Positions 12,775-54,626 of a stretch of DNA of 64,000 nucleotides are shown one piece after another. A program made the position numbers and the translations under genes. Position 1 is the stretch's first letter; each line of letters opens with the position of its first letter. Where the stretch lies: positions 124,001 through 188,000 of the IMG/VR virus record IMGVR_UViG_3300009181_000033, one strand, 5' to 3'. The notes under the pieces are model-generated. The model saw only the letters and a list, made by a program, of their open reading frames with translations. It made no database searches and was not told where the DNA came from.

Positions 12775-13056
12775 ATGCTAGACGAGCCGAACCTTCTTGA
12801 AAGACATGTTGTTGTTCTAAGCGGCAAAGACACAATGCTGAAGGGCAATTTTTATGAAATCCAGTGTTCTAATGGCAGCATCATTGCTGTGGACAAGAGC
12901 CTTTGGAATTCATGGACGGGTATTAGGTACATGAATGGTGAAGAATACCATGGAACAGTTTTTGTGATGGGCACACAAAAACCATATGGTGGAACGAGAA
13001 TATGCACGTGCAACACATGCCAAAAAGACTGTGATTTTAAACGTCAGTTGAATTAG
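12775..13056 (+). CDS. Hypothetical protein with C-terminal Cys cluster
   Basis: ATG at 12775; CTCNTC near the C-terminus. Confidence 0.55.
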   Translation: MLDEPNLLERHVVVLSGKDTMLKGNFYEIQCSNGSIIAVDKSLWNSWTGIRYMNGEEYHGTVFVMGTQKPYGGTRICTCNTCQKDCDFKRQLN

Positions 13057-13373
13057 CGTTTTATGGGAGGGGTTGGAATAACGTTAAAGTCATTGGTGTA
13101 AATATCGGGTCCCACGTGGGGATTTTCGGAAGTGGGAGGAACAGGACCCCAACAATCTTCTTCGTCATAAAGAGGATCCCTGAGATGACCAGCTATTTCG
13201 TCTGGTTCATCCTTGTCTTTCACGGATATTCTTCCGATTTGTTCTCTGTCAGACATGCTGGGTCCCATAGGATTACGCCCCATGGGACGACTTGGTATTG
13301 TAGTAGCACCACCGGCTTCAATTAAGATCATTTTTCTAATAATTGATCTAAATTCTGATAGCTTCATCGACAT
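13053..13373 (-). CDS. Hypothetical protein with N-terminal amphipathic tag
   Basis: MKLSEFRSIIRKMILIEA followed by an acidic, Pro-rich region. Confidence 0.65.
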   Translation of the reverse strand: MSMKLSEFRSIIRKMILIEAGGATTIPSRPMGRNPMGPSMSDREQIGRISVKDKDEPDEIAGHLRDPLYDEEDCWGPVPPTSENPHVGPDIYTNDFNVIPTPPIKR

Positions 13374-13376
13374 GTG

Positions 13377-14429
13377 TCAAAACCTCATTCCATAATAATA
13401 TCTAAAATAATTTTCTAATCTCAACTGTTCTGTTTCATTTGCCCAATAAGGCAACATTAAAAATGACGCAAGATACATTCCATTTGCGCCGGTTCCTGCC
13501 GTTGTATTATTTGAACCAATTGTTATTTGTTGGTTAATGGGAAAAACTATTGTTGGCGATACCGAAAATGTTCCCCATGTGTTAGTAACCAATGTGTGTT
13601 GAAACTTTCCATTAACGTAAAGCTCTTGTTCACTACCCAGGCCCTTTTGTGGCGCTTGATTTGGATCTAACAAACTCATTTTCATTGTAACTAAAATCCA
13701 ATCATTCAATTCCGGCAAATTTGTTGTGTCATATGAACTTGTTCGAATAGCACCACCAACATTTCCATAAACGATTAATCTCAATGTGTCTGTTGGTGTA
13801 ACTGCTTGCGTGTTAAAAATCATTCCGCCAGGCTGAGTTGAACTATCTAAGGTGAATAATGTTTTTGATGCTATTTCTTTTGATTTCAAAACCATCATCA
13901 CAGTAACTGATGGCGTTTTTGTTCCGCTTGGATTAATTGGAGCATATTCAAGCCTTGAATATCCAGAAGTGCCTGCAACCAACCATGTGGATAACCATGG
14001 TGCAACGCTAGAACCACTTGAGCCTCCAAAGTCTAAATACTTGTGAGAGCCCAATAGGCCTGTTTTTATATATGGTCTATTTGTTGCGCTACCATTTGAA
14101 CCAAGAATGACTTTTGTGCCAGAATGTGTTATTGTTGGAAAATTTGTTGCTGAAACCAAGCCTGTTGCAACCCATTTTGTTTCCAAGTCGGCTATGTCAG
14201 GAAGATAAGTGTAAGTGCCATCTTCTAGTGCTGAATCTGCATTCGCATAAATCCACGGTGTTTTAAAGCCTGAGAGTGAGGCAGGGTCCTGAATTTTGCC
14301 CTTATTTGTCGAATCTTCCTTTAACCCTCCCTTAAGCCCAGATTGCAATATTGCATAAATTGTCCCAGATTTGACACCTTGCATCAAACCTTGAGTCAGG
14401 CCTCTTTTTAATCCGCTGGGAGAGGTCAC
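13377..14429 (-). CDS. Virion protein with a probable ConA/LamG-like domain
   Basis: Beta-rich; ELYVNG and LENYFRYYYG end; GLxxG repeats at the N-terminus. Confidence 0.55.
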   Translation of the reverse strand: MTSPSGLKRGLTQGLMQGVKSGTIYAILQSGLKGGLKEDSTNKGKIQDPASLSGFKTPWIYANADSALEDGTYTYLPDIADLETKWVATGLVSATNFPTITHSGTKVILGSNGSATNRPYIKTGLLGSHKYLDFGGSSGSSVAPWLSTWLVAGTSGYSRLEYAPINPSGTKTPSVTVMMVLKSKEIASKTLFTLDSSTQPGGMIFNTQAVTPTDTLRLIVYGNVGGAIRTSSYDTTNLPELNDWILVTMKMSLLDPNQAPQKGLGSEQELYVNGKFQHTLVTNTWGTFSVSPTIVFPINQQITIGSNNTTAGTGANGMYLASFLMLPYWANETEQLRLENYFRYYYGMRF

Positions 14430-14818
14430 GCGTAAGTCTCACCAAATATCATAAAAGAACCAGTTGAATTTACCACGCTAGATAATTGAGCTGTAATGGT
14501 ATGACCTGCAGGTACGTTATAGTAAGGCACGCCATTTGCATCTTTTAATTTTTGAAACACAGCTGCTCCCGCTGAAGCTCCAAAAACATCGTTTGCTGAA
14601 GCAGCTGTTGAGGTAAATGAAAAAAATGCCTGGGCTGTTCCACCAAATGTGCCAGAGACAGTCAGTGTTGGTGTGCCTGTGTTTATAAAACAGGAAATCC
14701 CATATAATCTACGATGGTTGGTTGGGTCGGAAGTCAATATGGTTTGTGCAACGTTGTTTGCGTTGACTAACGTCCCTGAAGCAAACGGAGCTGATGTGAA
14801 TGTTAATGAAGTAGCCAT
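14426..14818 (-). CDS. Hypothetical virion protein
   Basis: 130-aa Ala/Thr/Ser-rich ORF in an operon with the fibre gene. Confidence 0.6.
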   Translation of the reverse strand: MATSLTFTSAPFASGTLVNANNVAQTILTSDPTNHRRLYGISCFINTGTPTLTVSGTFGGTAQAFFSFTSTAASANDVFGASAGAAVFQKLKDANGVPYYNVPAGHTITAQLSSVVNSTGSFMIFGETYA

Positions 14819-20154: not shown

Positions 20155-20433
20155 TCAATCGACCACTCTTTCATTTTGCTGTTTTCTCCACATTATTCTT
20201 CCGCGGCTCGTATCGTAAGGTGAAACTTCTATTGCGACAAAATCACCTGGCAAAATATGGATATGATTCTGTCTTAGTTTTCCTGAAAGTGTTGTCAAAA
20301 CAACATTCCCGCCATCTATTCTTACTTTGAATAATGTTCCAGGTAGTGCCTCTTCAACAACACCATGCAGTTCCATTCTATCATCTCTTTCAAGAATTTG
20401 CTTTTGAACACTATTCTTCTTCTTCTTCGACAT
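20155..20433 (-). CDS. infA: Translation initiation factor IF-1
   Basis: GVVEEALPGTLFKV...SGKLRQNHIHILPGDFVAIEVSPYDTSRGRI; Lys-rich N-terminal extension. Confidence 0.95.
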   Translation of the reverse strand: MSKKKKNSVQKQILERDDRMELHGVVEEALPGTLFKVRIDGGNVVLTTLSGKLRQNHIHILPGDFVAIEVSPYDTSRGRIMWRKQQNERVVD

Positions 20434-20605
20434 TTTCCTTCTTTTTTCCTTCTTTCTTTTTTTCGTCACCTAAGCCTGGTGGTGTTATCTCTGTTCCACT
20501 CGAAGCGGTACCGCTTAACCCGCCAGGATAAAAGCCTGCAGATAACCTGAGATTCCTCTGAATCTCTTCACGTATCATTATTTTTAATAGAGACAAGGTT
20601 GACAT
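20411..20605 (-). CDS. Small hypothetical protein with N-terminal amphipathic tag
   Basis: MSTLSLLKIMIREEI and a charged tail. Confidence 0.5.
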   Translation of the reverse strand: MSTLSLLKIMIREEIQRNLRLSAGFYPGGLSGTASSGTEITPPGLGDEKKKEGKKKENVEEEEE

Positions 20606-29490: not shown

Positions 29491-29503
29491 ACAGGAGTGC
29501 AAA

Positions 29504-36545: not shown

Positions 36546-36920
36546 TCACATGTCTAAGGCATTTTCCTCATCCTTTAGAATTCTTGCCTCAAGTTCCTTT
36601 AGCGACTTAGAAAACCTCTTTGTCAAAGCCTTCTTCGCTATTCTTTTTGCACTTTCAGCATCTCCTCGGGTCATTTGCAATATTTTTTCAAATTTCAAAT
36701 TTACTATTCTTTTTGCAGAATTCAATATATCCGATGGAATTTCAAAACCATAAGAAAATTCTATTTCTTCAGCCCACTCATCAACTATTGCATCAGAAGG
36801 AGCCTCAGATCCAAAAAAGGATTTGATTTTTTCCCACCAGCTCTTTTGGCTCTTCTCCTGGGGTTATAGTTCGCTAGCCAAATATTTTGATATAAATTCT
36901 CTTAAAATTTTTTCATTCAT
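36546..36920 (-). pseudogene. 124-codon gene, absent from the ORF track, interrupted by an in-frame TAA at 36864-36866
   Basis: MNEKILREFISKYLASEL*PQEKSQKSWWEKIKSFFGSEAPSDAIVDEW...KDEENALDM*; start overlaps the upstream stop (TAATG) and the gene fills the gap exactly. Confidence 0.7.
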
Positions 36921-37923: not shown

Positions 37924-38340
37924 ATGAAAATTGTTAAAGAGATATTTAAGGCCATAGTTCAAGAAGGTATCGAACTCGAACTGAATGGGGAGCTTGACAA
38001 TTACGAACTGAATACTGAAGCCATAGAAAATGAATACTATAGCGAAATCCTAAGAGAAGCCGAATACAAAGGAAGAGATGTTCCGTTGGGAAAGCCTATG
38101 AGGGGAGACGTAAAAAAATACAAAGTTTATGTAAAAGACCCTAAAACTGGCAACGTCAAGAAAGTAAATTTCGGAGATCCAAACGCCGAAATAAAGAGAG
38201 ACGACCCAGAACGTCGCAAGAATTTCAGGGCCAGGCATGGATGCGGGACGAAAAGAGCTTCCAATAGAACGAAAGCTGCCTATTGGTCGTGTCGACTATG
38301 GTCGAGGAAACCTGTTTCTAAAATCATGAAGGGGGAATAA
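37924..38340 (+). CDS. Conserved phage protein (DUF6321-like basic domain) with an acidic N-terminal leader
   Basis: LREAEYKG, KKYKVYVKDPKTGNVKKVNFGD, RRKNFRARHGC, AYWSC. Confidence 0.7.
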   Translation: MKIVKEIFKAIVQEGIELELNGELDNYELNTEAIENEYYSEILREAEYKGRDVPLGKPMRGDVKKYKVYVKDPKTGNVKKVNFGDPNAEIKRDDPERRKNFRARHGCGTKRASNRTKAAYWSCRLWSRKPVSKIMKGE

Positions 38341-41412: not shown

Positions 41413-42324
41413 ATGCACAAAAAAATTTCGAGTCAAAATCTAAGAAAATTGATCAGAGAAATCATTGAGGAAGAAACGGCAATTCCCGGTGATGCCCCTT
41501 CTGAAAACCAAGTTCATCTTTTTGACTTTGATGATACACTTGCTGTAACACAGGATCCCACAGCTGTAATGCTCTACAATGATGAAATCCCTGCACATAA
41601 ATCGGCAGACGAAGTCATAAATTGGCTGACACAATTTAAAATATCTGATGATGATCTAATAAACCCAGGCATTGCGCAAATACCGCAGAGGGGTGGACAC
41701 GCTGCATATATTAATTCGGCAGCTTTGGCTAAAATACAGACAGCCTATAATAGAAGCCAACAAAAGGTCAGCGGAATAAGTGAACCCAAACAAGGTGAAT
41801 CTATATTAATGGACTTTACACCATGTGCATCAACAAACCTCGATGCAGCCAAACCAATAGATTCAACTATTGAAAAAATGAAGAGAATGCAAGATGTAGG
41901 AGCAACAACAGGTGTAGTGACAGCAAGAAAAGAAAAAGGAAGTGGAATCGATCTTCATGGACACAAGGTTGATGCCACCAACAAAGAAGACATAATTAAA
42001 TTTCTTGCACAAAATGGCGTAAGCCCCAGTGCTGGCGTCATGGGTGTCTCTGGACAAAATAAAGGAAATTTCATTGCGAAATATTTTGCCGGCGACAAGA
42101 ACACAAAGGAAATACACTTTTACGATGATATGCCTAAAAACACTTCAGAAGTTGAACAAGCGCTAGCAGAGAAAACTCCTTCGGAATTATTCATATATGG
42201 ACCAGGTGAATTCGACAAAGGAGAAGCAAATCCAAATGTTCCTTCAAAGAGTCATCCTGCTAAAAAGCAAAAGTTCGAAAATTTTGATTTATCGAGATGG
42301 AATAAATTGGCCGGACTAAAATGA
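41413..42324 (+). CDS. HAD-superfamily phosphatase-like protein with N-terminal tag
   Basis: FDFDDTL, VTAR, K, FYDD; N-terminal NLRKLIREIIEE; C-terminal RWNKLAGL. Confidence 0.75.
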   Translation: MHKKISSQNLRKLIREIIEEETAIPGDAPSENQVHLFDFDDTLAVTQDPTAVMLYNDEIPAHKSADEVINWLTQFKISDDDLINPGIAQIPQRGGHAAYINSAALAKIQTAYNRSQQKVSGISEPKQGESILMDFTPCASTNLDAAKPIDSTIEKMKRMQDVGATTGVVTARKEKGSGIDLHGHKVDATNKEDIIKFLAQNGVSPSAGVMGVSGQNKGNFIAKYFAGDKNTKEIHFYDDMPKNTSEVEQALAEKTPSELFIYGPGEFDKGEANPNVPSKSHPAKKQKFENFDLSRWNKLAGLK

Positions 42325-43156: not shown

Positions 43157-43444
43157 TCAAGAAGTTGGATCAATTGCTTCCAGGAATAAATCAAATGTAT
43201 CTCGGTGTGCAACACCTTGCTGAATCTTAACAACCTTAAGAGCGGCTTGCAACGTTTTCATGTCAAGTCGATCCTGATATTCTTCAATGATTTCTTTTCT
43301 ATCTGTTTTTAGGAGCTCGATCTCATTATCAACTGTTTCAATCTTTCCAATGAACTCCTTCACAAGACCTCTAAGGGTATTGATCTCATCAGGCTGCATA
43401 TCAGCGGTATTGTATTGCTTCTTGGGTGGTGCTTTCTTTGGCAT
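43157..43444 (-). CDS. DsbA/GapR-like double-stranded DNA-binding protein
   Basis: FIGKIETVDNEIELLKTDRKEIIEE...LDMKTLQAALK helical pattern. Confidence 0.6.
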   Translation of the reverse strand: MPKKAPPKKQYNTADMQPDEINTLRGLVKEFIGKIETVDNEIELLKTDRKEIIEEYQDRLDMKTLQAALKVVKIQQGVAHRDTFDLFLEAIDPTS

Positions 43445-43476: not shown

Positions 43477-44556
43477 TCAAAGCGCCTTTATTTTTTGTAT
43501 TGTCGACCTGTAGTCTTTAACATATTGAGCATCTTCAGGGACGCCTTGCTTCAAGACTTCCTGCACTTTGTCTTCGAGTGATTTTATGTAAAATTGCTTC
43601 ATAGAAGCACGAATAGTTTTCATAATGCTCTTTTCTGCTTCTTGTTTTTCTTTGCCTTCAAGCTCAGAAAGCTTCTTAATTTCAGGTATTTCCTTCTTGT
43701 TTTTCTTCATCAAATTCTGAAGATCCTGGGGAGATTTTGCATTCTTTAAAACGCCTTCTGCTTGATTGTAAATTTGATCCAAGCTTTTTCTATAAATTTC
43801 CGTGGCGGTCTTCTTCATTTTTTCAGCCTCGGGGCTTGAATAGACTTTCGTCAAAAATTTTGGATTCTTCATCAATTTTTGTGGCGTAAATCCACCTTTT
43901 TGATTTTTTTCATTGGAGTCATCCTCTGTGATTTGTTGAGATTCTCCCCACAAATCACTTGGGTTACGACTCTTGCCACCTGATTCCCGAGAAGTCTTTT
44001 TAGGAGCCTTGGCACCTTTGTTGCCTAACATCCACCTTCCTGTTTTTTGCAACTTTTCTTTTGTGGCGTCATATAATTGGTCAGAAAATCCACCGGTTGT
44101 TGCACTCAAAAGACTCTTTGCGACTTTGGGTGCAGCCTTTGCCGTAAAGGCACCCATGACAAGTGCTGGTGAAGCCATAAAGGCTAGCGCCACAGCGTCT
44201 CCCTTAAACGCCTCATCATTTCTTTTATAAACTTCTGAATAATCATTTCTTATCTTGTTGATCTCTTCTTTTTCTTCATCAAAAACGCCGGCATAATCGG
44301 CCCTCAACATGGGATTGAGGGTCGTCACAATTGTTCCCCAAACAACTTTTACTAGAGTTTTGGCACGCGTTGTAAGCTCCTTCGTTTTACCTATAGCAGT
44401 TTGCACTGCATCAACAAATGGAGATCCAAATACCTTAAAAAGATCCCCTTGATAAGAAGAACCCATCATTCCTGCTGTATCCATTGGGCCATAGTCATCT
44501 TCTTTTAAGATGTGTTGAACATATTCCTTCAACAATATTTCGCCAGATTTTTTCAT
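43477..44556 (-). CDS. Hypothetical helical protein with N-terminal tag
   Basis: LLKEYVQHILKED; ATATTTA 5 nt upstream. Confidence 0.7.
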   Translation of the reverse strand: MKKSGEILLKEYVQHILKEDDYGPMDTAGMMGSSYQGDLFKVFGSPFVDAVQTAIGKTKELTTRAKTLVKVVWGTIVTTLNPMLRADYAGVFDEEKEEINKIRNDYSEVYKRNDEAFKGDAVALAFMASPALVMGAFTAKAAPKVAKSLLSATTGGFSDQLYDATKEKLQKTGRWMLGNKGAKAPKKTSRESGGKSRNPSDLWGESQQITEDDSNEKNQKGGFTPQKLMKNPKFLTKVYSSPEAEKMKKTATEIYRKSLDQIYNQAEGVLKNAKSPQDLQNLMKKNKKEIPEIKKLSELEGKEKQEAEKSIMKTIRASMKQFYIKSLEDKVQEVLKQGVPEDAQYVKDYRSTIQKIKAL

Positions 44557-44593: not shown

Positions 44594-45190
44594 ATGTCAA
44601 CAACAATAGCTCTGCTTCCAGGAAGTTTTAAACCTTATCACGCCGGACACGATGGACTAGTAAGACTCGCAGCATCAGAATGTGACGAAGTACATCTCTT
44701 TATATCAACATCCGATAGAAGTCGCAAAGGGGAAATGACCATATATGGAACAGACATGCAAAGAATATGGCTTGATTTTATAGAGCCAACGTTACCCGAA
44801 AATGTTGTTGTCGAATACGGTGGAGCTCCTGTTCAAAAAGTGTATGCAGAGCTAGAAGAGGCCGAAGCTGCCGCAAGCGAAGACACTTATGTAATCTACT
44901 CAGACGAAGAAGACATACTGAAATACACAGATGCAGCTCTCACCAAAGTCGCACCAACACTGTTCGAAAATGGACAAATAGAAAGAAGGCCTGTCTCAAG
45001 AACAGAAACAGTCCCAGTCAGCGGTACCAAAATGAGAGAATACCTGGCGACAGGCGACTCAAAAAACTTCGCCAAATTCTTGTCGCCAAGTATTCGTCAA
45101 TACTCTCAGCAAATAATAGACATTCTAACTCGGAAGCAAATAGGAGAAAGTCTATTAAAAAGATACATCAAGGAATTCATCCAACTCTAA
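44594..45190 (+). CDS. HxGH (cytidylyltransferase-like) nucleotidyltransferase with C-terminal tag
   Basis: PGSFKPYHAGH, VSGTKMRE; ends ESLLKRYIKEFI. Confidence 0.82.
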   Translation: MSTTIALLPGSFKPYHAGHDGLVRLAASECDEVHLFISTSDRSRKGEMTIYGTDMQRIWLDFIEPTLPENVVVEYGGAPVQKVYAELEEAEAAASEDTYVIYSDEEDILKYTDAALTKVAPTLFENGQIERRPVSRTETVPVSGTKMREYLATGDSKNFAKFLSPSIRQYSQQIIDILTRKQIGESLLKRYIKEFIQL

Positions 45191-46340
45191 TATTGACTTG
45201 GTTTGGAACAATTTTTCCTTGAGTGTTTCTGACTTCGACAACATATCTGCCCTTTGTGGTCAAAATTCTACAAGAAATTTGTTTCGTGGTTCCTGGATAA
45301 GATATGTCTATTCTCTTCACCACACCAACTAATTCCAGGGCATGTTCTTGATTTTCAATTTTTTCTACATGCCATTTACCGCCACCCATGTCTCTAGCGT
45401 ACCAATATCCGTAACCATAACCAGAAGCTAAATATCTCTGGACTTTTTCGTAATCCTGTGTGCCAGATGGGGCAACGTCCTTGCTCATCTCAGGGTCTTT
45501 GCTTGAGAAACGAGAAGCAGGAGTCTTAGTCACTGAGGATGGTGTACCACGCAAGTAATTAGTTAGACCTCTGGCTGCCAAAGTTTTGTTGATGCCTAGA
45601 GCTCTTAAAAAATCGTCAGTTGGATGTGAACCTGACTTAACGATAGGTTCTCCGGTTTTTTTATCTTCATCCTGAACAAATCCACCTACATAACCTGTAT
45701 TGGCAAAAGTATTACCTGAGGGATCCTTCAGGGAGATAAAAACCTTTTTACCAGATTCAGCATTTCCAGCCGAGTCTGGTCTTTTTAAAATAAGTGTTAG
45801 GTCGGAAATTATTGGACCAACATTCGGCACTTCAGGGAGCAAAGGCCTTGCATTGTTCTTGCCCCCTGTTTGTTCTGAATCCTTAATGTTATTCGGATTG
45901 ATTCCGATCGCCTTTAAAAGGCTAGCTATTCTGGGAGAGATCTTTCCTGATTTCAGATCCTGTGCTTCACTTGCAACCTCATCTTCGAAAACCTGTCCTT
46001 TGTTTCTGCCGCTGGTGAATAGAACATTGTATTGTTTTCCTCCATGGTTCACGATATATGTCGTAAATCTTCCACTCAAGGAACCTGGATCACCTTTGGG
46101 AATGGAATCCAATAGCTTAATTCTTGCCTTCTTCAAAATCTTGGCAATCTCTTCACCAGAAAAAAGGTGTGACGTAGAAGGAGCTAGTCTTATCTCTTTG
46201 TCAGAAGCGACCTTTACCTGAAGGCCTTCAACACCTGAGTCTGCTGCGGCTGAAACTATCAAATTAGCAACCAACACAGTATCAGGTGATTTCGCCTCCT
46301 TTATGAAGTTCCTGATATATTGCTTCAATAGATCATTCAT
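45177..46340 (-). CDS. Putative PD-(D/E)xK-like nuclease-fold protein with N-terminal tag
   Basis: KGQVFE...ISDLTL...FISLK; starts MNDLLKQYIRNFIKEA. Confidence 0.5.
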   Translation of the reverse strand: MNDLLKQYIRNFIKEAKSPDTVLVANLIVSAAADSGVEGLQVKVASDKEIRLAPSTSHLFSGEEIAKILKKARIKLLDSIPKGDPGSLSGRFTTYIVNHGGKQYNVLFTSGRNKGQVFEDEVASEAQDLKSGKISPRIASLLKAIGINPNNIKDSEQTGGKNNARPLLPEVPNVGPIISDLTLILKRPDSAGNAESGKKVFISLKDPSGNTFANTGYVGGFVQDEDKKTGEPIVKSGSHPTDDFLRALGINKTLAARGLTNYLRGTPSSVTKTPASRFSSKDPEMSKDVAPSGTQDYEKVQRYLASGYGYGYWYARDMGGGKWHVEKIENQEHALELVGVVKRIDISYPGTTKQISCRILTTKGRYVVEVRNTQGKIVPNQVNIRVG

Positions 46341-47599
46341 ATCTTTATCCCTTTTCTTCCATACTTGAACAACCCCAAAATTTGATTGGCGGCCGCAAAT
46401 GAACCCGTAAATTTATACGCATTTCCTTTATAGATGAACACAACTCCTTCCATGGGCGAAGTTATGTTGCTCACGTCCTTGAGCTTTTCCATTTGTTGTT
46501 TGAGGATGGACATGGCACCTTCATTACCGCTAGCTTCGATAGCGTTGATTGCTGTCTGAACCTCACTTCGCAACCTGGAGACCTCGCGATCAGAATCATC
46601 AATCAGGGTTGAGTTAAGGCCTTTCAAGAGCTCAACAGCAAAATCGTTGATAGCTATCTCTATTGGCATCACGTACTGCTTGAACAAGGCTCCAGCGCCC
46701 TTGACAAAATCCGATATGGTTTTATGCAATGATTTATCTGCAGCTTTTTTAATGTCAACCACGGTCGGTGCATCAGACTCTTCAAACACTCTTGCCATCA
46801 ACATATTGGCTACCTTAGGCGGAAGACCGAGAGCATCAACGTCAGCTCTTATCAAGAGCCTCAAATAGTCACCTATCGTATCCGAATCACCCACTCCGGC
46901 AGAAGCGGCTGCCTCGTCAATCTTGGCAGCCGTTGTTGTGAAAATGGTGCCATTAGAAAGATTATTCATTCGGATGAGCGAAGGACCTTTGACTCTCCAG
47001 CCTGTCTGAGAAATCGAGGCTTGCATTCTATCGATGTATTGTGCTAGTGTATCAACACCATCAACCTCATCTTCTGACATCTCAACACTGCCTGTATTCG
47101 TTCTTTTGAAAACGGGCCAACCATGAAAAACGATATTATTAGAATCGTAATTTATGACGTTTGGATTTTTTGTGTATATAACCTCGATTGAATACCATCG
47201 ATCAACTGATGGACCAAAGATCTTTTCTTTGACTTTTTTTGGCAATGAACCTACAGCGCCTTGTAATACCTTGAAGGCATTAGTAAAAGCTTCTTCTACT
47301 GATCCTCTTCCAGCAAATTTTGCTGCCAATGCCGTAGCATCCATGCCGCCCTTGCTGACATCTGAACCCCTTGTGACTCTAATTTCTTCAGAAGATATAT
47401 CATAAGAAAAAACAAGATTCATGCCATCCATTTTTTCTGACACTTTTTCAAGACGACCAGTCGCAGCTCTTCTTAAGATCTTTTTAATTTCACCAAATGT
47501 TAAATCCCTATTGTCATAGAGATGCATGAGGTGACCTACTAGGCCCCCGCATACCAAAAGCTGTTTATTCAACAAGGTGGTGGGAGATGATAAAATCAT
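46337..47599 (-). CDS. DUF6267-like protein with ATP-dependent ligase-type motifs
   Basis: GHLMHLYD, EKMDG (KxDG), EGVVF, YKFTGSF. Confidence 0.6.
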   Translation of the reverse strand: MILSSPTTLLNKQLLVCGGLVGHLMHLYDNRDLTFGEIKKILRRAATGRLEKVSEKMDGMNLVFSYDISSEEIRVTRGSDVSKGGMDATALAAKFAGRGSVEEAFTNAFKVLQGAVGSLPKKVKEKIFGPSVDRWYSIEVIYTKNPNVINYDSNNIVFHGWPVFKRTNTGSVEMSEDEVDGVDTLAQYIDRMQASISQTGWRVKGPSLIRMNNLSNGTIFTTTAAKIDEAAASAGVGDSDTIGDYLRLLIRADVDALGLPPKVANMLMARVFEESDAPTVVDIKKAADKSLHKTISDFVKGAGALFKQYVMPIEIAINDFAVELLKGLNSTLIDDSDREVSRLRSEVQTAINAIEASGNEGAMSILKQQMEKLKDVSNITSPMEGVVFIYKGNAYKFTGSFAAANQILGLFKYGRKGIKI

Positions 47600-47868
47600 T
47601 TTTGTTTCTCGTTAATCTGTTGTCTATTTTTTGCTGACTGCAGCTCTCTCTTTAAGTGATTTACCAAATGCTTATAATGAGATCTTTTTTCGGTCCCACG
47701 CGCACATTTATCACGCCAATACTCTGCATCACCGATTCTTGATTGTAAATCATCTATATGGTCTGTAGAACCCCAATCAGTCGTTCTGTCTTTAGACAAA
47801 GAAACCTGACGAACCTGTCTTTCAACCAACAGCTTGATGTAATTTTTAATTAGATTTATGCCTTCCAT
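47596..47868 (-). CDS. Hypothetical protein with N-terminal tag
   Basis: MEGINLIKNYIKLLVER. Confidence 0.6.
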   Translation of the reverse strand: MEGINLIKNYIKLLVERQVRQVSLSKDRTTDWGSTDHIDDLQSRIGDAEYWRDKCARGTEKRSHYKHLVNHLKRELQSAKNRQQINEKQK

Positions 47869-48064
47869 CTTCTTGCTCCAAAGCATTTTTCATAGAACCA
47901 ACAAGAAATTTCTTTATGTGACTCTCGGTGATCTCGCCAGAAGAAGACAGGGAGAAAGCATTTTTTACTTGTTCAAGAAATTCTTGTGACATGGAAAGTT
48001 CAACTTCTTCACCAGAAGGAAGATTGAATTTCATGCTATTTGCTATTTTCATATTGACACTCAT
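47846..48064 (-). CDS. Hypothetical protein
   Basis: 72-aa ORF overlapping its neighbours. Confidence 0.5.
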   Translation of the reverse strand: MSVNMKIANSMKFNLPSGEEVELSMSQEFLEQVKNAFSLSSSGEITESHIKKFLVGSMKNALEQEDGRHKSN

Positions 48065-48660
48065 TTTTTAGCCTTAATGGGAACAGGTCCTGAACTATCT
48101 TCTAGAGATGTCTTTTTTGTATCGCCTTGTTTTGGCGACGGTGTCTTTACAACAACAGGTTTAATGGTGACTTTTGTTTTCTCTTCGCCTCTTTTCATTT
48201 CAATATTGGCAGGATTTGAATCAGGTGAAACAGCTGATTTGGCAGGTATTTCGCCTGTTACAACCTGCGATATTCCTTTCAAGAAGGCTAACAAGGCAAC
48301 CCTCTCTGCTTTTGTCAAACTATTGACATATTCTTCAAGCTTTGAAGATATGTCTTCATCCTTGAAAGAACGACCAGCTCTTATGGCATTGAGTCTATCA
48401 ATGACATCAGAAGCGGTAATTTCCCCCTTCTTCATTTTCTCACTGGCGTCATCTAGGGTTTTTGAAGACGCATTTGTTTTTTCTGCAGAATTTTCAGCGT
48501 CATCATCTTCCTCAGTCAAAGACTCCTGGCGTTCTTTTTCGGCAACTGCATTTTGATACAACGCTTGCTTTACGCTTTCTTTTACAACTTTATCAATAAT
48601 AGTCGATAACTGCAAGCCTGTTTGAATATTCATTTGTCTTTCCATTAAAACACCATTCAA
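48061..48660 (-). CDS. Hypothetical protein
   Basis: 199-aa ORF (LNAIRAGRSFKD); LSTIIDKVVKES near the N-terminus. Confidence 0.6.
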   Translation of the reverse strand: MNGVLMERQMNIQTGLQLSTIIDKVVKESVKQALYQNAVAEKERQESLTEEDDDAENSAEKTNASSKTLDDASEKMKKGEITASDVIDRLNAIRAGRSFKDEDISSKLEEYVNSLTKAERVALLAFLKGISQVVTGEIPAKSAVSPDSNPANIEMKRGEEKTKVTIKPVVVKTPSPKQGDTKKTSLEDSSGPVPIKAKK

Positions 48661-49443: not shown

Positions 49444-50204
49444 AAAAGAACGTAACCTCCCACTACAGCTGCCTCAGTAAATGATGAGCCATTCGTCCAA
49501 ACGTTCCTGTTTCTATCTACGATGCAAGAGCCGCCTTTGAACTCCAGATCTCTCTCCTTGCCAACCCTATTCGAGACAACGACGTTCGCGTCTGTTTCTT
49601 CTGCTAGTTCAACCCATGATGAATCAGGATAGCCATAATCACTGCCCCAATTCGTCAATAGGGCTATTGTGTCGACAGAGCCATTTTTATAAAACCTCTG
49701 TTCATTCTTATAGAATTTATAACTATCTCTATAGTTGTTCATGACATCCCTACAAATCAACACACCTGTTCTTCCTGCTTTGGTGATTATAACAGGGTGC
49801 ATTGCCTCTGATGAAGTCGCCCATAAATTATCGGATCCCCACAGGTTGTGCTTCTGGCAATTCTCAACAAGGCCACTTGGTCCAACAATGGCAGCTGAAT
49901 TAAACAATTGATCTCCACGTTGTTCAACATAGCCAAAGACTATGTGGGTGTTAAATTTCTTTGCTATAGGGGCAAAAACTTCGGTTTGATAACCGTTTTT
50001 CTCCTGTGCACAAGAAGCTGCTTCTCTTTTGTTTTCCAAGACATAACCACTGATGCATAGTTCTGGAAGAACAACCAAACATGCGCCTTTAGCTGCAGCT
50101 TCGAAAGCCATTTGTTGTGCTGTTTTTAAATTTGCATATACGTCCAGGATCTTTGGCTGAAACTGGACTGCTGCAACGATAGGCGCATTTTGCATTTCAA
50201 TCAC
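49440..50204 (-). CDS. Carbon-nitrogen hydrolase (nitrilase superfamily)
   Basis: Triad LPEL, QKHNL, LICRD; SNRVG, FKGGS. Confidence 0.9.
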   Translation of the reverse strand: MIEMQNAPIVAAVQFQPKILDVYANLKTAQQMAFEAAAKGACLVVLPELCISGYVLENKREAASCAQEKNGYQTEVFAPIAKKFNTHIVFGYVEQRGDQLFNSAAIVGPSGLVENCQKHNLWGSDNLWATSSEAMHPVIITKAGRTGVLICRDVMNNYRDSYKFYKNEQRFYKNGSVDTIALLTNWGSDYGYPDSSWVELAEETDANVVVSNRVGKERDLEFKGGSCIVDRNRNVWTNGSSFTEAAVVGGYVLL

Positions 50205-51222
50205 CTTCTATGGGGTTAATAACCTTCTGACCTGATCTTTGAGTTTTCTTCAAGTACTTGTCAAAGAAGACACGGAAGGTGTCCAATTCCGTTACCATCT
50301 CGGGATGGTCCTTCATGAGTTGCACATCAGCAGCTGTAAGCTCACCAGAGCTGCTAAATTCCTTGATATATTCGTTCATGGCAGTCAGAAACAATATTTC
50401 TTTCTCGTCAGGGTCCATTTCTATAAGATATCGTGCCTTCGCCAGAGCATTATCGATGAACTGCTGAAGCTTACCGTGCGACTTGAGACCGAGCTCGGTT
50501 GCAATTGCAGGAATCGAGGCACCACCAACGTCAGACATCGTCACGTTCCTCTTGGGTACAAGGCTTGGATTTGCAGCAAGAGCTTCATCCAAAGCCATGG
50601 CTGCCTCGGGATCTATCTCTTCAACAACTTCGATTGCTGATCTAATTGTCGCCAATCTATCACCAGCAAATCTTGTCAATTTAGAAACGAGCAATTTGAG
50701 GAATTCTTCAGGTTGGTCTTTTATGTCGAGGACATCAAATGTCTTCATGGCTAAGGCAACTATCTTTTCAGCCATATCAACATCACCGTCACTGCCATAA
50801 GAAGCACCTGAATAGCTGAGACCAGTGTCAGTATGGGCACCTGCAGCTTCACTTAATAATTTCCTGATGGTTTTTCTTATGACTTCTTCAATCTTTTGAT
50901 CTTCCTTGTTTTTCATTTTCTTTTCCTCACTGTCGTCATTTAAATCGGCAATAGAATTTTTTATTGAATCGTAAACCTTTGAAGCATCATCATCAGAAAT
51001 ATCTTGAACAATAGAAGACAACGCAGTGTTCAATTCAATCCTATTTCTTGGCTTGAAATTTGGATTGCCTGGATTTGTGATGGCTTCAGAAGGATCAACA
51101 ACATCTGAAATAGATGTAGGCAATTGATCATGCTCGGCTTTTTTCCAGCCCATCGGGGCTGGATTGTCAAGCATTTCCTTGATAAATTGCCTCAGCGCCT
51201 TTTTAGCAACTACTATCTTCAT
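50197..51222 (-). CDS. Hypothetical protein with two copies of the amphipathic tag
   Basis: ALRQFIKEML and VIRKTIRKLLSEA. Confidence 0.7.
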   Translation of the reverse strand: MKIVVAKKALRQFIKEMLDNPAPMGWKKAEHDQLPTSISDVVDPSEAITNPGNPNFKPRNRIELNTALSSIVQDISDDDASKVYDSIKNSIADLNDDSEEKKMKNKEDQKIEEVIRKTIRKLLSEAAGAHTDTGLSYSGASYGSDGDVDMAEKIVALAMKTFDVLDIKDQPEEFLKLLVSKLTRFAGDRLATIRSAIEVVEEIDPEAAMALDEALAANPSLVPKRNVTMSDVGGASIPAIATELGLKSHGKLQQFIDNALAKARYLIEMDPDEKEILFLTAMNEYIKEFSSSGELTAADVQLMKDHPEMVTELDTFRVFFDKYLKKTQRSGQKVINPIEGD

Positions 51223-52829: not shown

Positions 52830-53085
52830 CCATCATTAGGCCTTTTATCTGCTTCTTTCTATTGGCCTTCGCGTCTTCTAGCATGGCTTTAATTCTCTTA
52901 GAAACTAATCGTTCGAAAGTTCTTTCTGCCTTCATGCTATCCTCGGCCATTGTTTCAGCATAGTCAGAAAAAAGTTCTTGCATTGTAAGATTGTGTTTAA
53001 ACATTTTTTCCCTAAGAGTTGCGTGAACCTCTTTGGGTATTTTTATATGCACACATTTTCTACTTTGAAACAAATCACTTCTCAA
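52759..53085 (-). CDS. Putative ribbon-helix-helix DNA-binding protein
   Basis: KCVHIKIPKEVHATLREK...TMQELF pattern. Confidence 0.5.
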   Translation of the reverse strand: MRSDLFQSRKCVHIKIPKEVHATLREKMFKHNLTMQELFSDYAETMAEDSMKAERTFERLVSKRIKAMLEDAKANRKKQIKGLMMGELDSNTLYSLLEEAEKTNNEKW

Positions 53086-53627
53086 GCGCTTCCCCCCATA
53101 GGACCTGCTGCCCCTGCTTTGGGAGCAATATTCTCATCTTCCATCTCAAAATTTGACTTACCGATCTCAATGTCATAAGAATCAAGCAAGTCAGCATTAA
53201 AAGATTCAACAACATCTTCTTCGTAATTTTTGGCTATATAATTACTGGCTCTTCTCAAGATTGTATTTCTCACCTCAAGAAGGGAATCGTAATTTTCTAC
53301 AAGCCTCATGACGTCAGAAACAAAAGAACGAATATCAATATCTTCAGCAGTTAATTTCTCAGGCTCTTCGTCCAGGACTTCGTCTTCATCATCAGCAGAT
53401 TCTTCGTCATCTTCAGCTTCGAACAACCTCCTGACTAGAGAACGAAAGTCACTCCCTTCTGTCTTGACATTCTTGGCCTCAGATTCATATGTGCTAAAAT
53501 ACTTGTCTATCTGGGCATCCAGAGAGTCTTCACCAGGCTCCATTTCTTCTTCCTTCGCTTCCCTTAAAAAGGAAGCAACTACACTACGAAGATAAAATTT
53601 TTTGCTTTTTTTTGAGTGAGTCATCAC
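53082..53627 (-). CDS. Acidic hypothetical protein with two tag copies
   Basis: YLRSVVASFLREA and FRSLVRRLFEA. Confidence 0.65.
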   Translation of the reverse strand: MMTHSKKSKKFYLRSVVASFLREAKEEEMEPGEDSLDAQIDKYFSTYESEAKNVKTEGSDFRSLVRRLFEAEDDEESADDEDEVLDEEPEKLTAEDIDIRSFVSDVMRLVENYDSLLEVRNTILRRASNYIAKNYEEDVVESFNADLLDSYDIEIGKSNFEMEDENIAPKAGAAGPMGGSA

Positions 53628-54385
53628 TTCACCACCTGAGCTATTTGTTCTGCCTTCTTAAATCTTTCTTCAATGGTTTCCCAATTAAATTCTCTCATTT
53701 GGGCAATAAGATAACTCTTTTTATCGTTGAGATAATCTCTATAGTAAGAATGCTCCCACATGTCGACAACAACTAATGGATAAAAGCCAACAGGGACATC
53801 ACCGCTATGATGACTAATCATAAAGTTGACATATTTTCTAAGGAACATGTGGTATCCTAAAACTGCCCAACCACTTCCAGCAGAAAGCGCACAGGCCATA
53901 AAATCACGCTGCCAATCATCAAAAGTACCAAAATCACGTTGTAGCCTAAGGTATGCGGTTGAATCCATTACAATTTCGCTATTTGGATCAAAACAATTAG
54001 CGAAATAAAGTTCATGTAACCAAGCAGCATTTAAGTTATAAACTTCATCAAGCTTAAGAGATCTATATGACGAATGTCTGGAATTGGTGTCAGATCTCTC
54101 TGCAGTATCAAGCTCAGAAGAAACCTTATTGAGACTCTCAACATATCCTTTGTAAAGATCAACGTGCGCACTCTTAGTCTTTTGTGAAACAAACTCAGAG
54201 ACTTGCTTGAATTGCTTTGGCTCATGAACGTATGATTCATTCAAATCAATTTTAGGCAAATTGGCAGTTACCTTTGTCATGTGAACATTCAATGTTTTTT
54301 TGATTATACCTTCAACGTCAACGTTGGCAAAGAGATTTTTATTATCAGTCAAGCTCATATTCGTCCTCCAGGGTGTCTTTATCAA
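53624..54385 (-). CDS. Fe/Mn superoxide dismutase-family protein with an N-terminal extension
   Basis: AH...YKGYV, LHELYF, FGTFDDW, GSGWAVL, DMWEHSYY. Confidence 0.85.
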   Translation of the reverse strand: MIKTPWRTNMSLTDNKNLFANVDVEGIIKKTLNVHMTKVTANLPKIDLNESYVHEPKQFKQVSEFVSQKTKSAHVDLYKGYVESLNKVSSELDTAERSDTNSRHSSYRSLKLDEVYNLNAAWLHELYFANCFDPNSEIVMDSTAYLRLQRDFGTFDDWQRDFMACALSAGSGWAVLGYHMFLRKYVNFMISHHSGDVPVGFYPLVVVDMWEHSYYRDYLNDKKSYLIAQMREFNWETIEERFKKAEQIAQVVK

Positions 54386-54626
54386 CCAAAAAATCGGTGC
54401 CCTCAGGCGTCTTCAATATAGCATCGCGAGGACCAACTGAAACAATCGTATAGAGAAATTGAGTCTTCTTGTGTCTCAACTTCAAATCCTTATCCAAGAC
54501 CTGTTCTTCTTTTCCATCGACCTTGGTTTTAAAAATGGCATCAACGCTCTCAGACAATGTTTTGAGTTTTGCATCCCACTCTTCTCTCATTATCCGGATG
54601 ATTTCAGATTCAGTAAGTTTTTTCAT
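54345..54626 (-). CDS. Hypothetical protein with N-terminal tag
   Basis: MKKLTESEIIRIMREE; ATATTTA and GGGAG upstream. Confidence 0.65.
   Translation of the reverse strand: MKKLTESEIIRIMREEWDAKLKTLSESVDAIFKTKVDGKEEQVLDKDLKLRHKKTQFLYTIVSVGPRDAILKTPEGTDFLVDKDTLEDEYELD

What the first reader, a model, noticed from the sequence alone, without database searches (positions are those of the whole stretch)
13053..54626. Shared amphipathic tag, mostly ending (L/I/M)-x-E, on about 14 unrelated proteins: candidate capsid-targeting and maturation-cleavage system
Seen: a helix of pattern L(K/R)x(Y/F/L/I)(I/V)(R/K)xx(L/I)xE recurs in otherwise unrelated genes (coordinate is the gene start): FRSIIRKMILIEA (13373), LLKIMIREE (20605), ILREFISKYLASE (36920), IFKAIVQE and ILREA (37924), LRKLIREIIEE (41413), LLKEYVQHILKE (44556), LLKRYIKEFI (C-terminus of 44594), LLKQYIRNFIKEA (46340), LIKNYIKLLVE (47868), LSTIIDKVVKE (48660), LRQFIKEML and IRKTIRKLLSEA (51222), LRSVVASFLREA and FRSLVRRLFEA (53627), IIRIMREE (54626). 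The SOD extension also ends LNE. Established: T4 internal proteins carry a short N-terminal capsid-targeting sequence that prohead protease gp21 removes after (L/I)-x-E. Inference: this is a portable address label that loads many cargo proteins, including enzymes, into the head for injection. Several tagged genes follow the ATANTTA motif, and none of the eight leaderless-promoter genes carries the tag.
Basis: partly seen in the sequence, partly recalled or inferred. Interest (0 to 1): 0.8.

Follow-up and report, generated by a model that had tools for sequence, protein, structure and literature searches.

The report
Shared head-targeting tag on phage proteins
A 298-kb uncultured freshwater phage puts the same short helical tag (consensus L-L-R/K-E-Y-I-R/K-E-x-L-x-E) on the ends of a dozen unrelated proteins, and the best reading is a T4-style address label that loads them into the assembling head and is then cut off, though packaging and cleavage are not shown.

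Summary
A 12-14 residue amphipathic motif sits at the N-terminus of about 10 unrelated window proteins. It also occurs once as a C-terminal add-on, twice as internal copies, and once as an 18-codon tag-only ORF. Three cited cases and the SOD extension are weak. The strict pattern starts 9 times in the first 25 residues, against 0.14 in shuffles. Orthologues keep the tag. The exact start M-K-L-L-R-E-Y-I-R heads at least 17 unrelated protein families on 19 IMG/VR contigs, with synonymous codon differences, so selection acts on the peptide.

I walked the source contig to 163 kb and found a T4-type head module: portal, S77 (gp21-like) prohead protease, acidic scaffold-like protein and gp23-like capsid protein. 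The ORF directly after the protease starts with one of the best tags in the genome. The capsid propeptide has VLKE where relatives have a conserved [LIV][LI]xE, which is also how the tag ends.

Best explanation (confidence 0.6): a T4-like capsid-targeting propeptide that binds the prohead core and is removed after Glu. Cleavage and packaging are inferred. The motif is longer than the T4 sequence and does not match it, so this is a new variant of a known kind. The ATANTTA link is not enriched for tagged genes.

The parts
13053..13373 (-). 106-aa protein. N-terminal tag MSMKLSEFRSIIRKMILIE|A is followed by a Gly/Pro-rich linker. The start resembles that of the ORF after the prohead protease.
   Evidence: Independent matrix 14.1 bits. 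No Pfam or PHROG family.
20411..20605 (-). 64-aa protein made of the tag (MSTLSLLKIMIREE) plus a disordered, highly charged tail.
   Evidence: 16.4 bits.
36864..36920 (-). 18-codon tag-only ORF, MNEKILREFISKYLASEL, ended by an in-frame TAA. The same frame stays open down to 36546. The orthologue in a related phage (L003 17907-18338) is uninterrupted.
   Evidence: The TAA is identical in two assemblies. No variant at the stop was listed in four other runs, where contig coverage is thin.
37924..38340 (+). 138-aa protein (weak DUF5754 hit, phrog_7595). The N-terminal MKIVKEIFKAIVQE is a weak, below-threshold tag candidate.
   Evidence: Below 6 bits.
41413..42324 (+). 303-aa HAD/phosphatase-like enzyme (FDFDDT motif). 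Tag NLRKLIREIIEEE at residues 9-21, followed by a linker.
   Evidence: 24.5 bits. ATAATTA lies 11 nt upstream.
43157..43444 (-). 95-aa conserved protein with the tag-like TLRGLVKEFIGKIE at residue 23. It may be part of the fold rather than a tag.
   Evidence: 10.5 bits. Conserved in L003, L007, L009, L018 and L022.
43477..44556 (-). 359-aa protein. Tag ILLKEYVQHILKE|DD is followed by a Gly/Met-rich linker. It belongs to a gene block that lies beside the head module in relatives.
   Evidence: 16.0 bits.
44594..45190 (+). 198-aa cytidylyltransferase-like enzyme. The tag is a C-terminal add-on (ESLLKRYIKEFIQL*), present only in this phage and its close relative L003. More distant homologues end before it.
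45177..46340 (-). 387-aa protein. Tag MNDLLKQYIRNFIKE|A. AlphaFold puts the tag in a low-confidence helix (residues 2-14) outside the fold, which begins at residue 19.
   Evidence: 25.1 bits.
47596..47868 (-). 90-aa ORF with tag INLIKNYIKLLVE|R. In relative L003 it is fused to the next gene (window 46337-47599) as a single 499-aa protein.
   Evidence: 15.8 bits.
48061..48660 (-). 199-aa charged protein. LSTIIDKVVKE is a weak, below-threshold tag candidate.
   Evidence: Below 6 bits. The orthologue has YLESIIQES.
50197..51222 (-). 341-aa protein with an N-terminal tag (ALRQFIKEML) and a second, internal copy (VIRKTIRKLLSE|A at residue 114) after an acidic stretch.
   Evidence: 17.0 and 17.8 bits.
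53082..53627 (-). 181-aa very acidic protein with an N-terminal tag (YLRSVVASFLRE|A) and an internal copy (DFRSLVRRLFE|A at residue 60).
   Evidence: 11.0 and 11.0 bits.
54345..54626 (-). 93-aa protein. SEIIRIMREE is a shortened, weak tag candidate that is conserved in the orthologue.
   Evidence: ATATTTA lies 17 nt upstream.
53624..54385 (-). Fe/Mn superoxide dismutase with an N-terminal extension of about 40 aa ending DLNE. It is only faintly tag-like.
   Evidence: Pfam Sod_Fe_C.
11979..12377 (+). Context: a 132-aa protein whose homologues lie directly after the S77 protease in many T4-type head modules.
34162..34764 (-). Context for a rival reading: ClpP-family protease gene.
   Evidence: PF00574, E=2.5e-26.

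Best explanation
The motif is a portable propeptide that targets proteins to the prohead core. It is the functional counterpart of the T4 capsid-targeting sequence, in a lineage of uncultured aquatic phages that share the T4-type head machinery.

Proposed steps:
1. The amphipathic helix (hydrophobic at positions 1, 2, 5, 6, 9, 10; basic at 3 and 7; acidic at 4, 8, 12) is tethered to its cargo by a flexible linker. It binds the scaffolding core of the assembling prohead, probably by packing against the same kind of helix on the core proteins.
2. The capsid shell closes around the core.
3. The S77 (gp21-like) prohead protease cuts after the Glu that ends the tag ([LIV][LI]-x-E). This frees the cargo inside the head, from where it can leave with the DNA at infection.

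Shown: the tag exists, is portable, is conserved as a peptide, sits outside the cargo fold, and co-occurs in one genome with an S77 protease, a T4-type portal, a scaffold-like protein and a gp23-like capsid protein. The head module's own small proteins carry the tag.

Inferred: binding to the core, cleavage after Glu, presence in virions, and ejection.
For: 1. Real and N-terminal.
- 9 pattern hits against 0.14 expected.
- 26-fold enrichment per position with a matrix trained on other genomes.
- No hits in T4.

2. Portable.
- No similarity between tagged proteins outside the tag.
- The exact M-K-L-L-R-E-Y-I-R occurs at 37 ORF starts in 23 loci from 19 IMG/VR contigs, on at least 17 unrelated clusters.
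- The C-terminal copy on the cytidylyltransferase is an add-on that distant homologues lack.

3. Peptide-level selection.
- Adjacent tags differ at synonymous sites.
- Orthologues at 33-66% identity keep M-x-x-LLKEYxxxILxE.

4. Separate from the cargo fold.
- In the 387-aa protein the tag helix (2-14) has pLDDT about 55, is followed by a linker, and the fold starts at residue 19.
- Atlas structural matches to that protein start at residues 15-16.
- The 25 residues after the tags are enriched in Gly, Pro and Asp.

5. The right machinery is in the same genome: Portal_T4, Peptidase_S77, a 689-aa acidic protein in the scaffold position, Gp23 capsid protein, gp13, gp15, sheath and T4_baseplate. The relatives' protease that anchored the search is 31% identical to T4 gp21.

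6. The head module itself uses the tag.
- The ORF right after the protease begins MKLSKFELKNIVKECLVEILSE|G (22.9 bits). The next begins MKLTNTMLRKIILQEV. Two ORFs after the capsid gene begin MKLTARLLRKLVESE and MRLTELQLRNLIASE.
- In 80 other S77 loci, 101 of 138 hits are N-terminal, and the post-protease ORF typically starts MKLTKSELKxIVKECLVEIL.
- That family has at least 800 members. Its first 23 residues are its most conserved part, followed by a variable linker. AlphaFold gives helix 5-23 at pLDDT about 80, a disordered linker and pTM 0.29, which is scaffold-like.

7. Same end as the capsid propeptide. The capsid proteins of these phages have ...LLENQAxELL(R/K)E|S just before the conserved mature region. 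This phage has QVLKE|S.

8. Scaffold-position proteins contain tag-like helices internally.

9. T4 precedent.
- Targeting propeptides are 10-19 residues long.
- Hydrophobic residues 4 and 7 do the targeting, and residues 8 and 10 (Glu) the processing.
- Alt is also processed at its C-terminus.
- The authors suggest such sequences let T4-like phages incorporate varied proteins (PMC9026906 section 2.6; PMC5694885).
- gp21 homologues cut after Glu.
Against: - There is no experimental evidence of cleavage, packaging or ejection for any tagged protein.
- T4 targeting sequences do not score on the tag matrix, so the link is by analogy, not homology.
- Many tagged genes lie among nucleotide-metabolism and replication genes, and several are enzymes (HAD-like, cytidylyltransferase) with no obvious role inside a capsid.
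- C-terminal and internal copies do not fit a simple N-terminal propeptide. One C-terminal copy (L003) has no Glu at all.
- Glu at position 12 is present in only about half of N-terminal hits.
- The capsid cleavage site is predicted from an alignment in which the known T4 site lies inside a T4-specific insertion.
- No cultured phage with a virion proteome was found to carry this tag.
Confidence: 0.6

Rival explanations
1. The helix is a docking or oligomerisation peptide for some other hub, not the prohead. It could recruit many enzymes to a common phage protein or complex. Examples are a replication or nucleotide-synthesis factory, or a phage-encoded chaperone (GroEL, DnaJ).
For: - Tagged genes lie among TK, thymidylate synthase, dCMP deaminase, SOD, CN-hydrolase, 5'-3' exonuclease and HhH-GPD genes.
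- Some cargos are enzymes.
- The phage encodes GroEL and two DnaJ-like proteins.
- The hydrophobic a/d-like spacing suits helix-helix packing.
- Copies at the C-terminus and inside proteins suit a docking module.
Against: - This reading does not explain why the most conserved and best-scoring copy heads the ORF directly after the prohead protease in hundreds of T4-type head modules.
- It does not explain why the tag ends in the same [LIV][LI]xE as the capsid propeptide.
- No candidate hub was identified.
Confidence: 0.17
2. The tag is a degradation or regulation signal, an N-degron read by the phage's ClpP-family protease with a host unfoldase. It would time the removal of a set of proteins.
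For: - A ClpP-family protease gene lies in the window at 34162-34764.
- The tags are terminal and exposed on linkers.
- From my own knowledge, ClpX recognises short terminal motifs that mix hydrophobic and basic residues.
Against: - The tag occurs on head-module core proteins that must persist through assembly.
- Relatives with tags were not checked for ClpP.
- A strongly conserved 12-residue amphipathic helix with three acidic positions is unlike known Clp degrons (my own knowledge).
- The link to S77 protease loci is much stronger.
Confidence: 0.05
3. The tag is a membrane-binding amphipathic helix, like the terminal helices of MinD, FtsA or MreB. It would bring proteins to the cell membrane, where T4-type proheads are also initiated.
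For: It has a terminal position at either end, a flexible linker and amphipathic periodicity.
Against: - Conserved Glu at positions 4, 8 and 12 gives a near-neutral or acidic helix. Membrane-targeting helices are cationic (my own knowledge).
- The fixed terminal Glu and the head-module context remain unexplained.
Confidence: 0.04
4. The tag is an encapsulation peptide for a separate protein compartment (microcompartment-like or encapsulin-like) rather than the virion head.
For: By eye, from my own knowledge, it closely resembles microcompartment encapsulation peptides such as the PduD, PduP and EutC N-termini. These are amphipathic helix plus linker, at either terminus.
Against: - None of the Pfam lists for the seven stretches that make up the rest of the 163 kb names a shell-protein family (BMC, EutN/CcmL). 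Most of the window's own ORFs had no Pfam scan.
- The only HK97-fold shell found is the phage capsid itself.
- 134 kb of the genome was not seen.
Confidence: 0.03
5. It is a chance or compositional artefact, or a nucleotide-level element such as a translation-initiation or recombination signal, that only looks like a peptide motif.
For: - Lys-rich starts (MK...) are common in AT-rich phage genes.
Against: - Shuffles, leave-one-out scoring, a matrix trained on other genomes and the T4 negative control all reject chance.
- Identical peptides are encoded with different synonymous codons.
- Copies at the C-terminus and inside proteins cannot be initiation signals.
Confidence: 0.01

Closest known systems
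Capsid-targeting sequences (CTS) of phage T4 internal proteins IPI-III, Alt, gp24, gp22 and gp67, removed by prohead protease gp21
   Same: - Short terminal propeptide: 10-19 residues in T4 and about 14-22 here, counting the residues before the motif.
- Found on otherwise unrelated proteins.
- Hydrophobic residues spaced i, i+3/4.
- Ends in hydrophobic-x-Glu.
- The genome encodes a gp21-family (S77) protease, a T4-type portal, a scaffold and a gp23-type capsid protein.
- Head-core proteins carry it too.
- C-terminal processing also has a T4 precedent in Alt.
   Different: - There is no sequence match. T4 sequences score below 3 bits on the tag matrix.
- The motif is longer and has fixed basic (positions 3, 7) and acidic (4, 8, 12) residues.
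- It is used on many more proteins: 16 N-terminal hits on 15 of the 219 ORFs seen, including enzymes.
- It occurs as internal and C-terminal copies.
- Nearly identical versions are shared across many genomes, whereas T4-type sequences are lineage-specific.
- Nothing is shown experimentally.
Long N-terminal propeptides of head and ejection proteins in phiKZ, 201phi2-1 and SPN3US giant phages, cut by gp175/gp245
   Same: - Giant-phage heads take up many proteins.
- A gp21-related protease cuts after Glu in a short X-X-E motif.
- Paralogues can share identical N-termini.
   Different: - Those propeptides are mostly over 100 residues and not a common short helix.
- Their motif is (S/A/G)-X-E or A-X-E, not [LIV][LI]-x-E.
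- Those phages are a different lineage (Chimalliviridae and relatives). This phage has T4-like baseplate, sheath, gp13, gp15 and gp23 genes.
Encapsulation peptides of bacterial microcompartments and cargo-loading peptides of encapsulins
   Same: A short amphipathic helix on a flexible linker, at either terminus, that loads unrelated enzymes into a protein shell. This is resemblance from my own knowledge, not tested.
   Different: - None of the Pfam lists for the seven flanking stretches of the 163 kb names a microcompartment or encapsulin shell family. Most window ORFs were not scanned.
- Those peptides are not removed by a protease and have no conserved terminal Glu.

Membership tests
T4-type capsid-targeting propeptide system (CTS plus gp21-family protease) | A short (10-19 residue) terminal peptide shared by otherwise unrelated proteins | tested here: met
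   - The motif starts at residues 3-12 and ends by residues 15-24 in 9 strong window cases.
- There is no similarity outside the tag.
- At least 17 unrelated families carry MKLLREYIR.
T4-type capsid-targeting propeptide system (CTS plus gp21-family protease) | The genome encodes a gp21-family (Peptidase_S77) prohead protease with a T4-type portal, scaffold and gp23 capsid protein | tested here: met
   L160 has PF03420 at 3423-4034, Portal_T4 at 1-2565 and Gp23 at 8029-9900. The related L016 protease aligns with T4 gp21 at 31% identity.
T4-type capsid-targeting propeptide system (CTS plus gp21-family protease) | The peptide ends in the protease's cleavage motif (hydrophobic-x-Glu), which is also used in the capsid protein propeptide | tested here: inconclusive
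   - [LIV][LI]xE ends most tags. Glu is at position 12 in 24/47 hits and in 66% of training sequences.
- The capsid propeptide has ELL(R/K)E or VLKE before the mature region.
- The protease's specificity in this lineage is unknown.
T4-type capsid-targeting propeptide system (CTS plus gp21-family protease) | Prohead core or scaffold proteins carry the same or a complementary sequence | tested here: met
   - The ORFs after the protease carry the tag (L160 4059-4472 and 4528-4773).
- Relatives' proteins in the scaffold position have internal tag-like helices.
T4-type capsid-targeting propeptide system (CTS plus gp21-family protease) | Sequence similarity to the T4 CTS (MKTYQEFIAE and relatives) | tested here: not met
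   T4 ipI-III, alt, gp24, gp22, gp67 and gp68 score between -9.6 and +0.2 bits on the tag matrix.
T4-type capsid-targeting propeptide system (CTS plus gp21-family protease) | The peptide is sufficient for incorporation into proheads and is cleaved off, and the cargo is found in virions | not testable with these tools
   This needs virion proteomics, protease assays or reporter fusions.
Bacterial microcompartment encapsulation peptides | Shell protein genes (BMC domain, EutN/CcmL) in the same genome | tested here: not met
   Neither family appears in the Pfam lists for the seven stretches that flank the window within contig 96,979-260,338. Within the window itself only 30 of about 81 ORFs were scanned against Pfam. 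134 kb of the genome was not seen.
Membrane-targeting amphipathic helices (MinD/FtsA type) | Net positive charge on the polar face | tested here: not met
   The consensus has Glu at positions 4, 8 and 12 alongside Arg/Lys at 3 and 7.

The most novel reading that the evidence does not exclude
A whole clade of uncultured aquatic phages with T4-type heads, including 160-460 kb genomes, uses one nearly universal, sequence-readable address label (L-L-R-E-Y-I-R-x-L-L-x-E). With it they load a large, fast-evolving and mostly unannotated arsenal of proteins, enzymes included, into the capsid for co-injection. If so, the ejected proteome of uncultured phages could be predicted from sequence alone. The same helix on the core proteins would be the receptor, giving a self-recognising coiled-coil loading system that also works from the C-terminus.
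Probability: 0.4. Interest if true: 0.8.

Novelty: new variant of a known kind. Interest (0 to 1): 0.62.

Why it matters
If the tag is a head-loading label, simple sequence scanning would list the proteins that these abundant freshwater and marine phages carry into the cell with their DNA. That class includes anti-defence and host-takeover factors and is normally visible only by virion proteomics of cultured phages.

- It would extend the T4 targeting principle, known from a few proteins in one model phage, to 15 of the 219 ORFs seen in this genome and to many uncultured lineages.
- It would explain a large block of unannotated genes. None of the 18 tagged proteins from other genomes that I tested had a Pfam or PHROG family.
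- It would give a compact, conserved peptide for loading foreign proteins into large capsids.
- It also points to a conserved, unannotated 137-aa head-module protein family (at least 800 members) as a likely core component.

Tried and rejected
- **DNA and protein searches of GenBank phages** with window DNA, the 359-aa protein, two MKLLREYIR proteins and a 25-aa tag found nothing. No cultured carrier of the tag was found.
- **Pfam and PHROG scans.** Ten MKLLREYIR proteins (one swapped between the two scans), nine proteins from relatives' head-module loci and nine window structural candidates plus the 420-aa ORF gave no family at all.
- **Fold search** of the 387-aa model against the PDB gave no significant match, only weak nucleotidyltransferase-like hits.
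- **Direct searches for this phage's protease failed.** An alignment scan of IMG/VR and the 5.8-billion-protein search, where I looked for a hit from a 297,898-bp contig, both returned too many closer relatives of the query. The head module was reached only by walking the contig with twelve look-ups.
- **A repeated DNA element** that could fetch the whole genome in one scan does not exist. The repeats are collagen-like coding repeats.
- **ATANTTA as a marker of tagged genes** is rejected (p=0.69). The motif does precede structural genes.
- **Xanthomonas phage XacN1, cyanophage S-RSM4 and Flavobacterium phage immuto head modules** show no N-terminal tag of this type. Their head-module proteins start with T4-like N-termini, and immuto alone has two internal tag-like helices.
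- **A nucleotide-level element** is rejected by synonymous variation.

Full report
**Source and setting.** The window is bases 124,001-188,000 of a 297,894-bp contig, IMGVR_UViG_3300009181_000033, also held as JGI Ga0114969_10000001. The phage has no close relative among GenBank phages. Near-identical DNA occurs in freshwater metagenomes from several studies. These include GroEL, a PrkA/SpoVR-like operon, a ClpP-like protease, UDP-glucose pyrophosphorylase, HhH-GPD, 5'-3' exonuclease, CN-hydrolase, pterin dehydratase, SOD, TK, thymidylate synthase and DnaE.

- The '36920' case is an 18-codon ORF, MNEKILREFISKYLASEL, followed by an in-frame TAA. The frame then continues open to 36546.
- The 44594 gene carries the motif at its C-terminus.
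- I found one additional case, in 43157-43444.

**Is it more than chance?**
- The pattern [LIFM][KR]x[YFILMV][IV][RKQ]xx[hydrophobic] starts 9 times in the first 25 residues of 81 ORFs. It starts 3 times in the remaining 18,487 positions.
- Shuffled proteins give a mean of 0.14 and a maximum of 3.
- All leave-one-out scores fall in the top 0.4% of window 13-mers.
- A matrix trained only on sequences from other genomes gives 16 N-terminal and 5 internal hits of at least 10 bits. This is over 219 ORFs in 163 kb of this genome and is 26-fold per position. It gives none in 150 ORFs of T4.
- By that matrix nine window genes are strong: 13373, 20605, 41413, 43444, 44556, 46340, 47868, 51222 and 53627. 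The last two each have a second, internal copy.
- 37924, 48660 and 54626 are below threshold. The SOD extension ends DLNE but is barely tag-like.
- The tagged proteins share nothing detectable outside the tag.

**The tag is a portable, selected peptide.**
- Orthologues of the 387-aa protein at 33-66% identity keep M-x-x-LLKEYxxxILxE.
- A syntenic locus from a related phage (L003) keeps the tag on each orthologue, including the C-terminal one. It also has further tagged genes.
- In 37 loci that hold relatives of the 387-aa gene, 47 of 73 hits lie within the first 30 residues. Glu is found at position 12 in 24 of those 47, although that position was not scored.
- The consensus is L-L-(R/K)-E-(Y/L/I)-I-(R/K)-E-x-(L/I)-x-E.
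- One 168-kb contig has several neighbouring genes that all begin MKLLREYIR, and they differ at synonymous codon positions.
- A degenerate DNA scan of IMG/VR for M-K-L-L-R-E-Y-I-R found 37 matches in 23 loci from 19 contigs. By my own rough estimate about one match was expected by chance. Every match is at an ORF start, and they fall on at least 17 unrelated protein clusters.
- The C-terminal copy on the cytidylyltransferase is appended beyond the point where more distant homologues end.
- AlphaFold places the tag of the 387-aa protein in a low-confidence helix (2-14) ahead of a linker, and the fold begins at residue 19. Atlas structural matches start at residues 15-16.
- The 25 residues after the tags are enriched in Gly, Pro and Asp.

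**What machinery goes with it?** Relatives that share the window's conserved gene block have a T4-type head module right beside it. The block is the 387-aa protein, cytidylyltransferase, the 359-aa, 95-aa and 144-aa proteins, GroEL and the 132-aa protein. The head module comprises portal, gp21-like protease and gp23-like capsid protein. The protease is 31% identical to T4 gp21 and carries PF03420.

To test the window's own phage I walked its contig to 260,338. Beyond the replication genes lie T4_baseplate, two sheath genes, gp15-like and gp13-like genes. Then comes a head module in this order:
- Portal_T4 portal, containing an intein
- a 285-aa ORF
- the Peptidase_S77 protease
- ORFs of 137, 81, 178 and 171 aa
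- a 689-aa acidic protein in the scaffold position
- the Gp23 capsid protein

**The head module itself uses the tag.**
- The 137-aa ORF directly after the protease begins MKLSKFELKNIVKECLVEILSEGIG. It scores 22.9 bits, among the best in the genome.
- The 81-aa ORF begins MKLTNTMLRKIILQEV. Two ORFs after the capsid gene begin MKLTARLLRKLVESE and MRLTELQLRNLIASE.
- In 80 other IMG/VR loci centred on S77 proteases, 101 of 138 hits are N-terminal. The post-protease ORF typically begins MKLTKSELKxIVKECLVEIL or MKKSDLKKLIKPLVKECIHEVL.
- The 137-aa family has at least 800 members, all unannotated. Its first 23 residues are its most conserved part, followed by a hypervariable linker and a conserved helical C-terminus.
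- AlphaFold gives a confident helix at 5-23, a disordered linker at 25-50 and a non-globular model with pTM 0.29, as expected of a core or scaffold component.
- Proteins in the scaffold position contain tag-like helices internally.
- The capsid proteins of this clade have a conserved ...LLENQAxELL(R/K)E|S just before the region that aligns with mature T4 gp23. In this phage the sequence is QVLKE|S. This is the same [LIV][LI]xE that ends the tag.

**Comparison with what is known.**
- In T4, IPI-III, Alt, gp24 and the core proteins carry N-terminal propeptides of 10-19 residues.
- Those propeptides give affinity for the scaffolding core, and gp21 removes them after Glu.
- In the IPIII sequence, residues 4 and 7 matter for targeting and residues 8 and 10 for processing.
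- Alt is also processed at its C-terminus.
- The authors suggest that such sequences let T4-like phages incorporate varied proteins (PMC9026906; PMC5694885; PMC3012670).
- Giant-phage gp21 homologues also cut after Glu.
- I read the T4 sequences from NC_000866: MKTYQEFIAE, MKTFKEF..., MELITELFDE, MAKINELLRE, MLKEQLIAE and MEGLIE. They share the logic (short, hydrophobic at i and i+3/4, ending in hydrophobic-x-Glu), but they score below 3 bits on the tag matrix.

The system therefore works like a T4 targeting sequence and comes with the defining machinery. The label itself is a distinct, longer and far more widely reused motif. No paper in the searchable library contains the motif.

**Mechanism and how sure.** The most likely mechanism has three steps:
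1. The tag helix packs against like helices on the core proteins as the prohead forms.
2. The capsid shell closes.
3. The S77 protease cuts after the terminal Glu and releases the cargo inside the head.

I put this at 0.6. The existence, portability and selection of the tag, and its co-occurrence with the head machinery, are shown. Binding, cleavage, packaging and ejection are inferred.

Points against:
- Many tagged genes sit among metabolic genes.
- Some cargos are enzymes with no obvious use in a capsid.
- Internal and C-terminal copies exist, and one C-terminal copy has no Glu.
- No cultured, proteomically characterised phage with this tag was found.

Rivals:
- A docking helix for another hub (0.17).
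- A ClpP degron (0.05). A ClpP gene is in the window.
- A membrane-binding helix (0.04). The conserved acidic positions argue against it.
- A separate compartment (0.03). None of the Pfam lists for the flanking stretches of the 163 kb names a shell family, though most window ORFs were not scanned.
- An artefact or nucleotide-level signal (0.01). This is rejected.

**Side claims.**
- ATANTTA lies within 80 nt upstream of 15 of 81 window genes, out of only 35 occurrences on both strands. It is no commoner before tagged genes: 3/12 against 12/69, p=0.69.
- ATANTTA also precedes the scaffold-position gene, gp13, sheath and two tagged head-module genes. It is therefore a plausible late-promoter core, and the few tagged genes that have it may be late.
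- The leaderless-promoter claim was not tested.

**Verdict.** I rate it a new variant of a known kind, with interest 0.62.

Noticed in passing
window 36546-36920 (-): An 18-codon tag-only ORF (MNEKILREFISKYLASEL) is ended by an in-frame TAA, and the same frame runs on for another 105 codons. The orthologue in a related phage (L003 17907-18338) is uninterrupted. The TAA is identical in two assemblies. One other metagenome has an extra T at 36907, which would move the start to the second ATG (MKKILREF...). This could be a pseudogene, a split gene or read-through.
   Followed up: partly
window 46337-47886 (-): The 90-aa tagged ORF and the 420-aa ORF that follows it overlap by ATGA. In relative L003 (8389-9888) they form one 499-aa ORF. 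This is a gene fission or fusion that separates a tag from its cargo.
   Followed up: partly
window, both strands (e.g. 41396-41402, 11945-11965); L160: ATANTTA occurs only 35 times in 64 kb, yet lies 11-45 nt upstream of 15 gene starts. It also precedes the scaffold-position gene, gp13 and sheath genes in the head/tail module. It is a candidate late-promoter core, comparable to the T4 late promoter TATAAATA.
   Followed up: partly
window 11979-12377 (+): This 132-aa protein has homologues directly downstream of the S77 protease in many T4-type head modules. It is sometimes duplicated, as at L096 12197-13128. It is an unannotated, conserved, head-associated family.
   Followed up: partly
window 13314-13250, 44490-44470, 51160-51150, 53090-53082 (-): A second short motif, (G/A)PMG or GPMD, recurs just after several tags and at one C-terminus: PMGRNPMGPSM, DYGPMDTAGMMG, PAPMGW and AAGPMGGSA*. 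It may be linker composition or a second signal.
   Followed up: no
L160 1-2565; L149 1-2952 / L155 7374-9945: The T4-type portal gene carries an intein with an HNH domain. The ribonucleotide reductase large subunit is also interrupted by inteins. A NUMOD3-type homing endonuclease gene lies just after the capsid gene.
   Followed up: no
window 14833-19941 (-), 2194-2730 (+), 6550-7101 (+): There are very long collagen-like (G-x-y, 9-nt period) and 42-nt-period coding repeats in a 1702-aa protein. Two smaller paralogous collagen-like proteins are also present. These are presumably fibres.
   Followed up: no
L155 3871-4872; window 9618-11635 (-), 28309-32794 (+): The phage encodes an actin-like protein (Pfam Volactin/Salactin), a GAF-histidine kinase with a response regulator, and a three-gene PrkA/YeaH/SpoVR-like operon. 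This is an unusual regulatory and cytoskeletal gene set for a phage.
   Followed up: no
L019 2853-3509; L056 5319-5849; L062 4477-5007: By eye, some MKLLREYIR-tagged proteins have ADP-ribosyltransferase-like motifs (VYRG..., S-x-S/T). This would parallel T4 Alt, a packaged ADP-ribosyltransferase. Pfam gave no hit for the one tested (L056 5319-5849), so this is unverified.
   Followed up: partly
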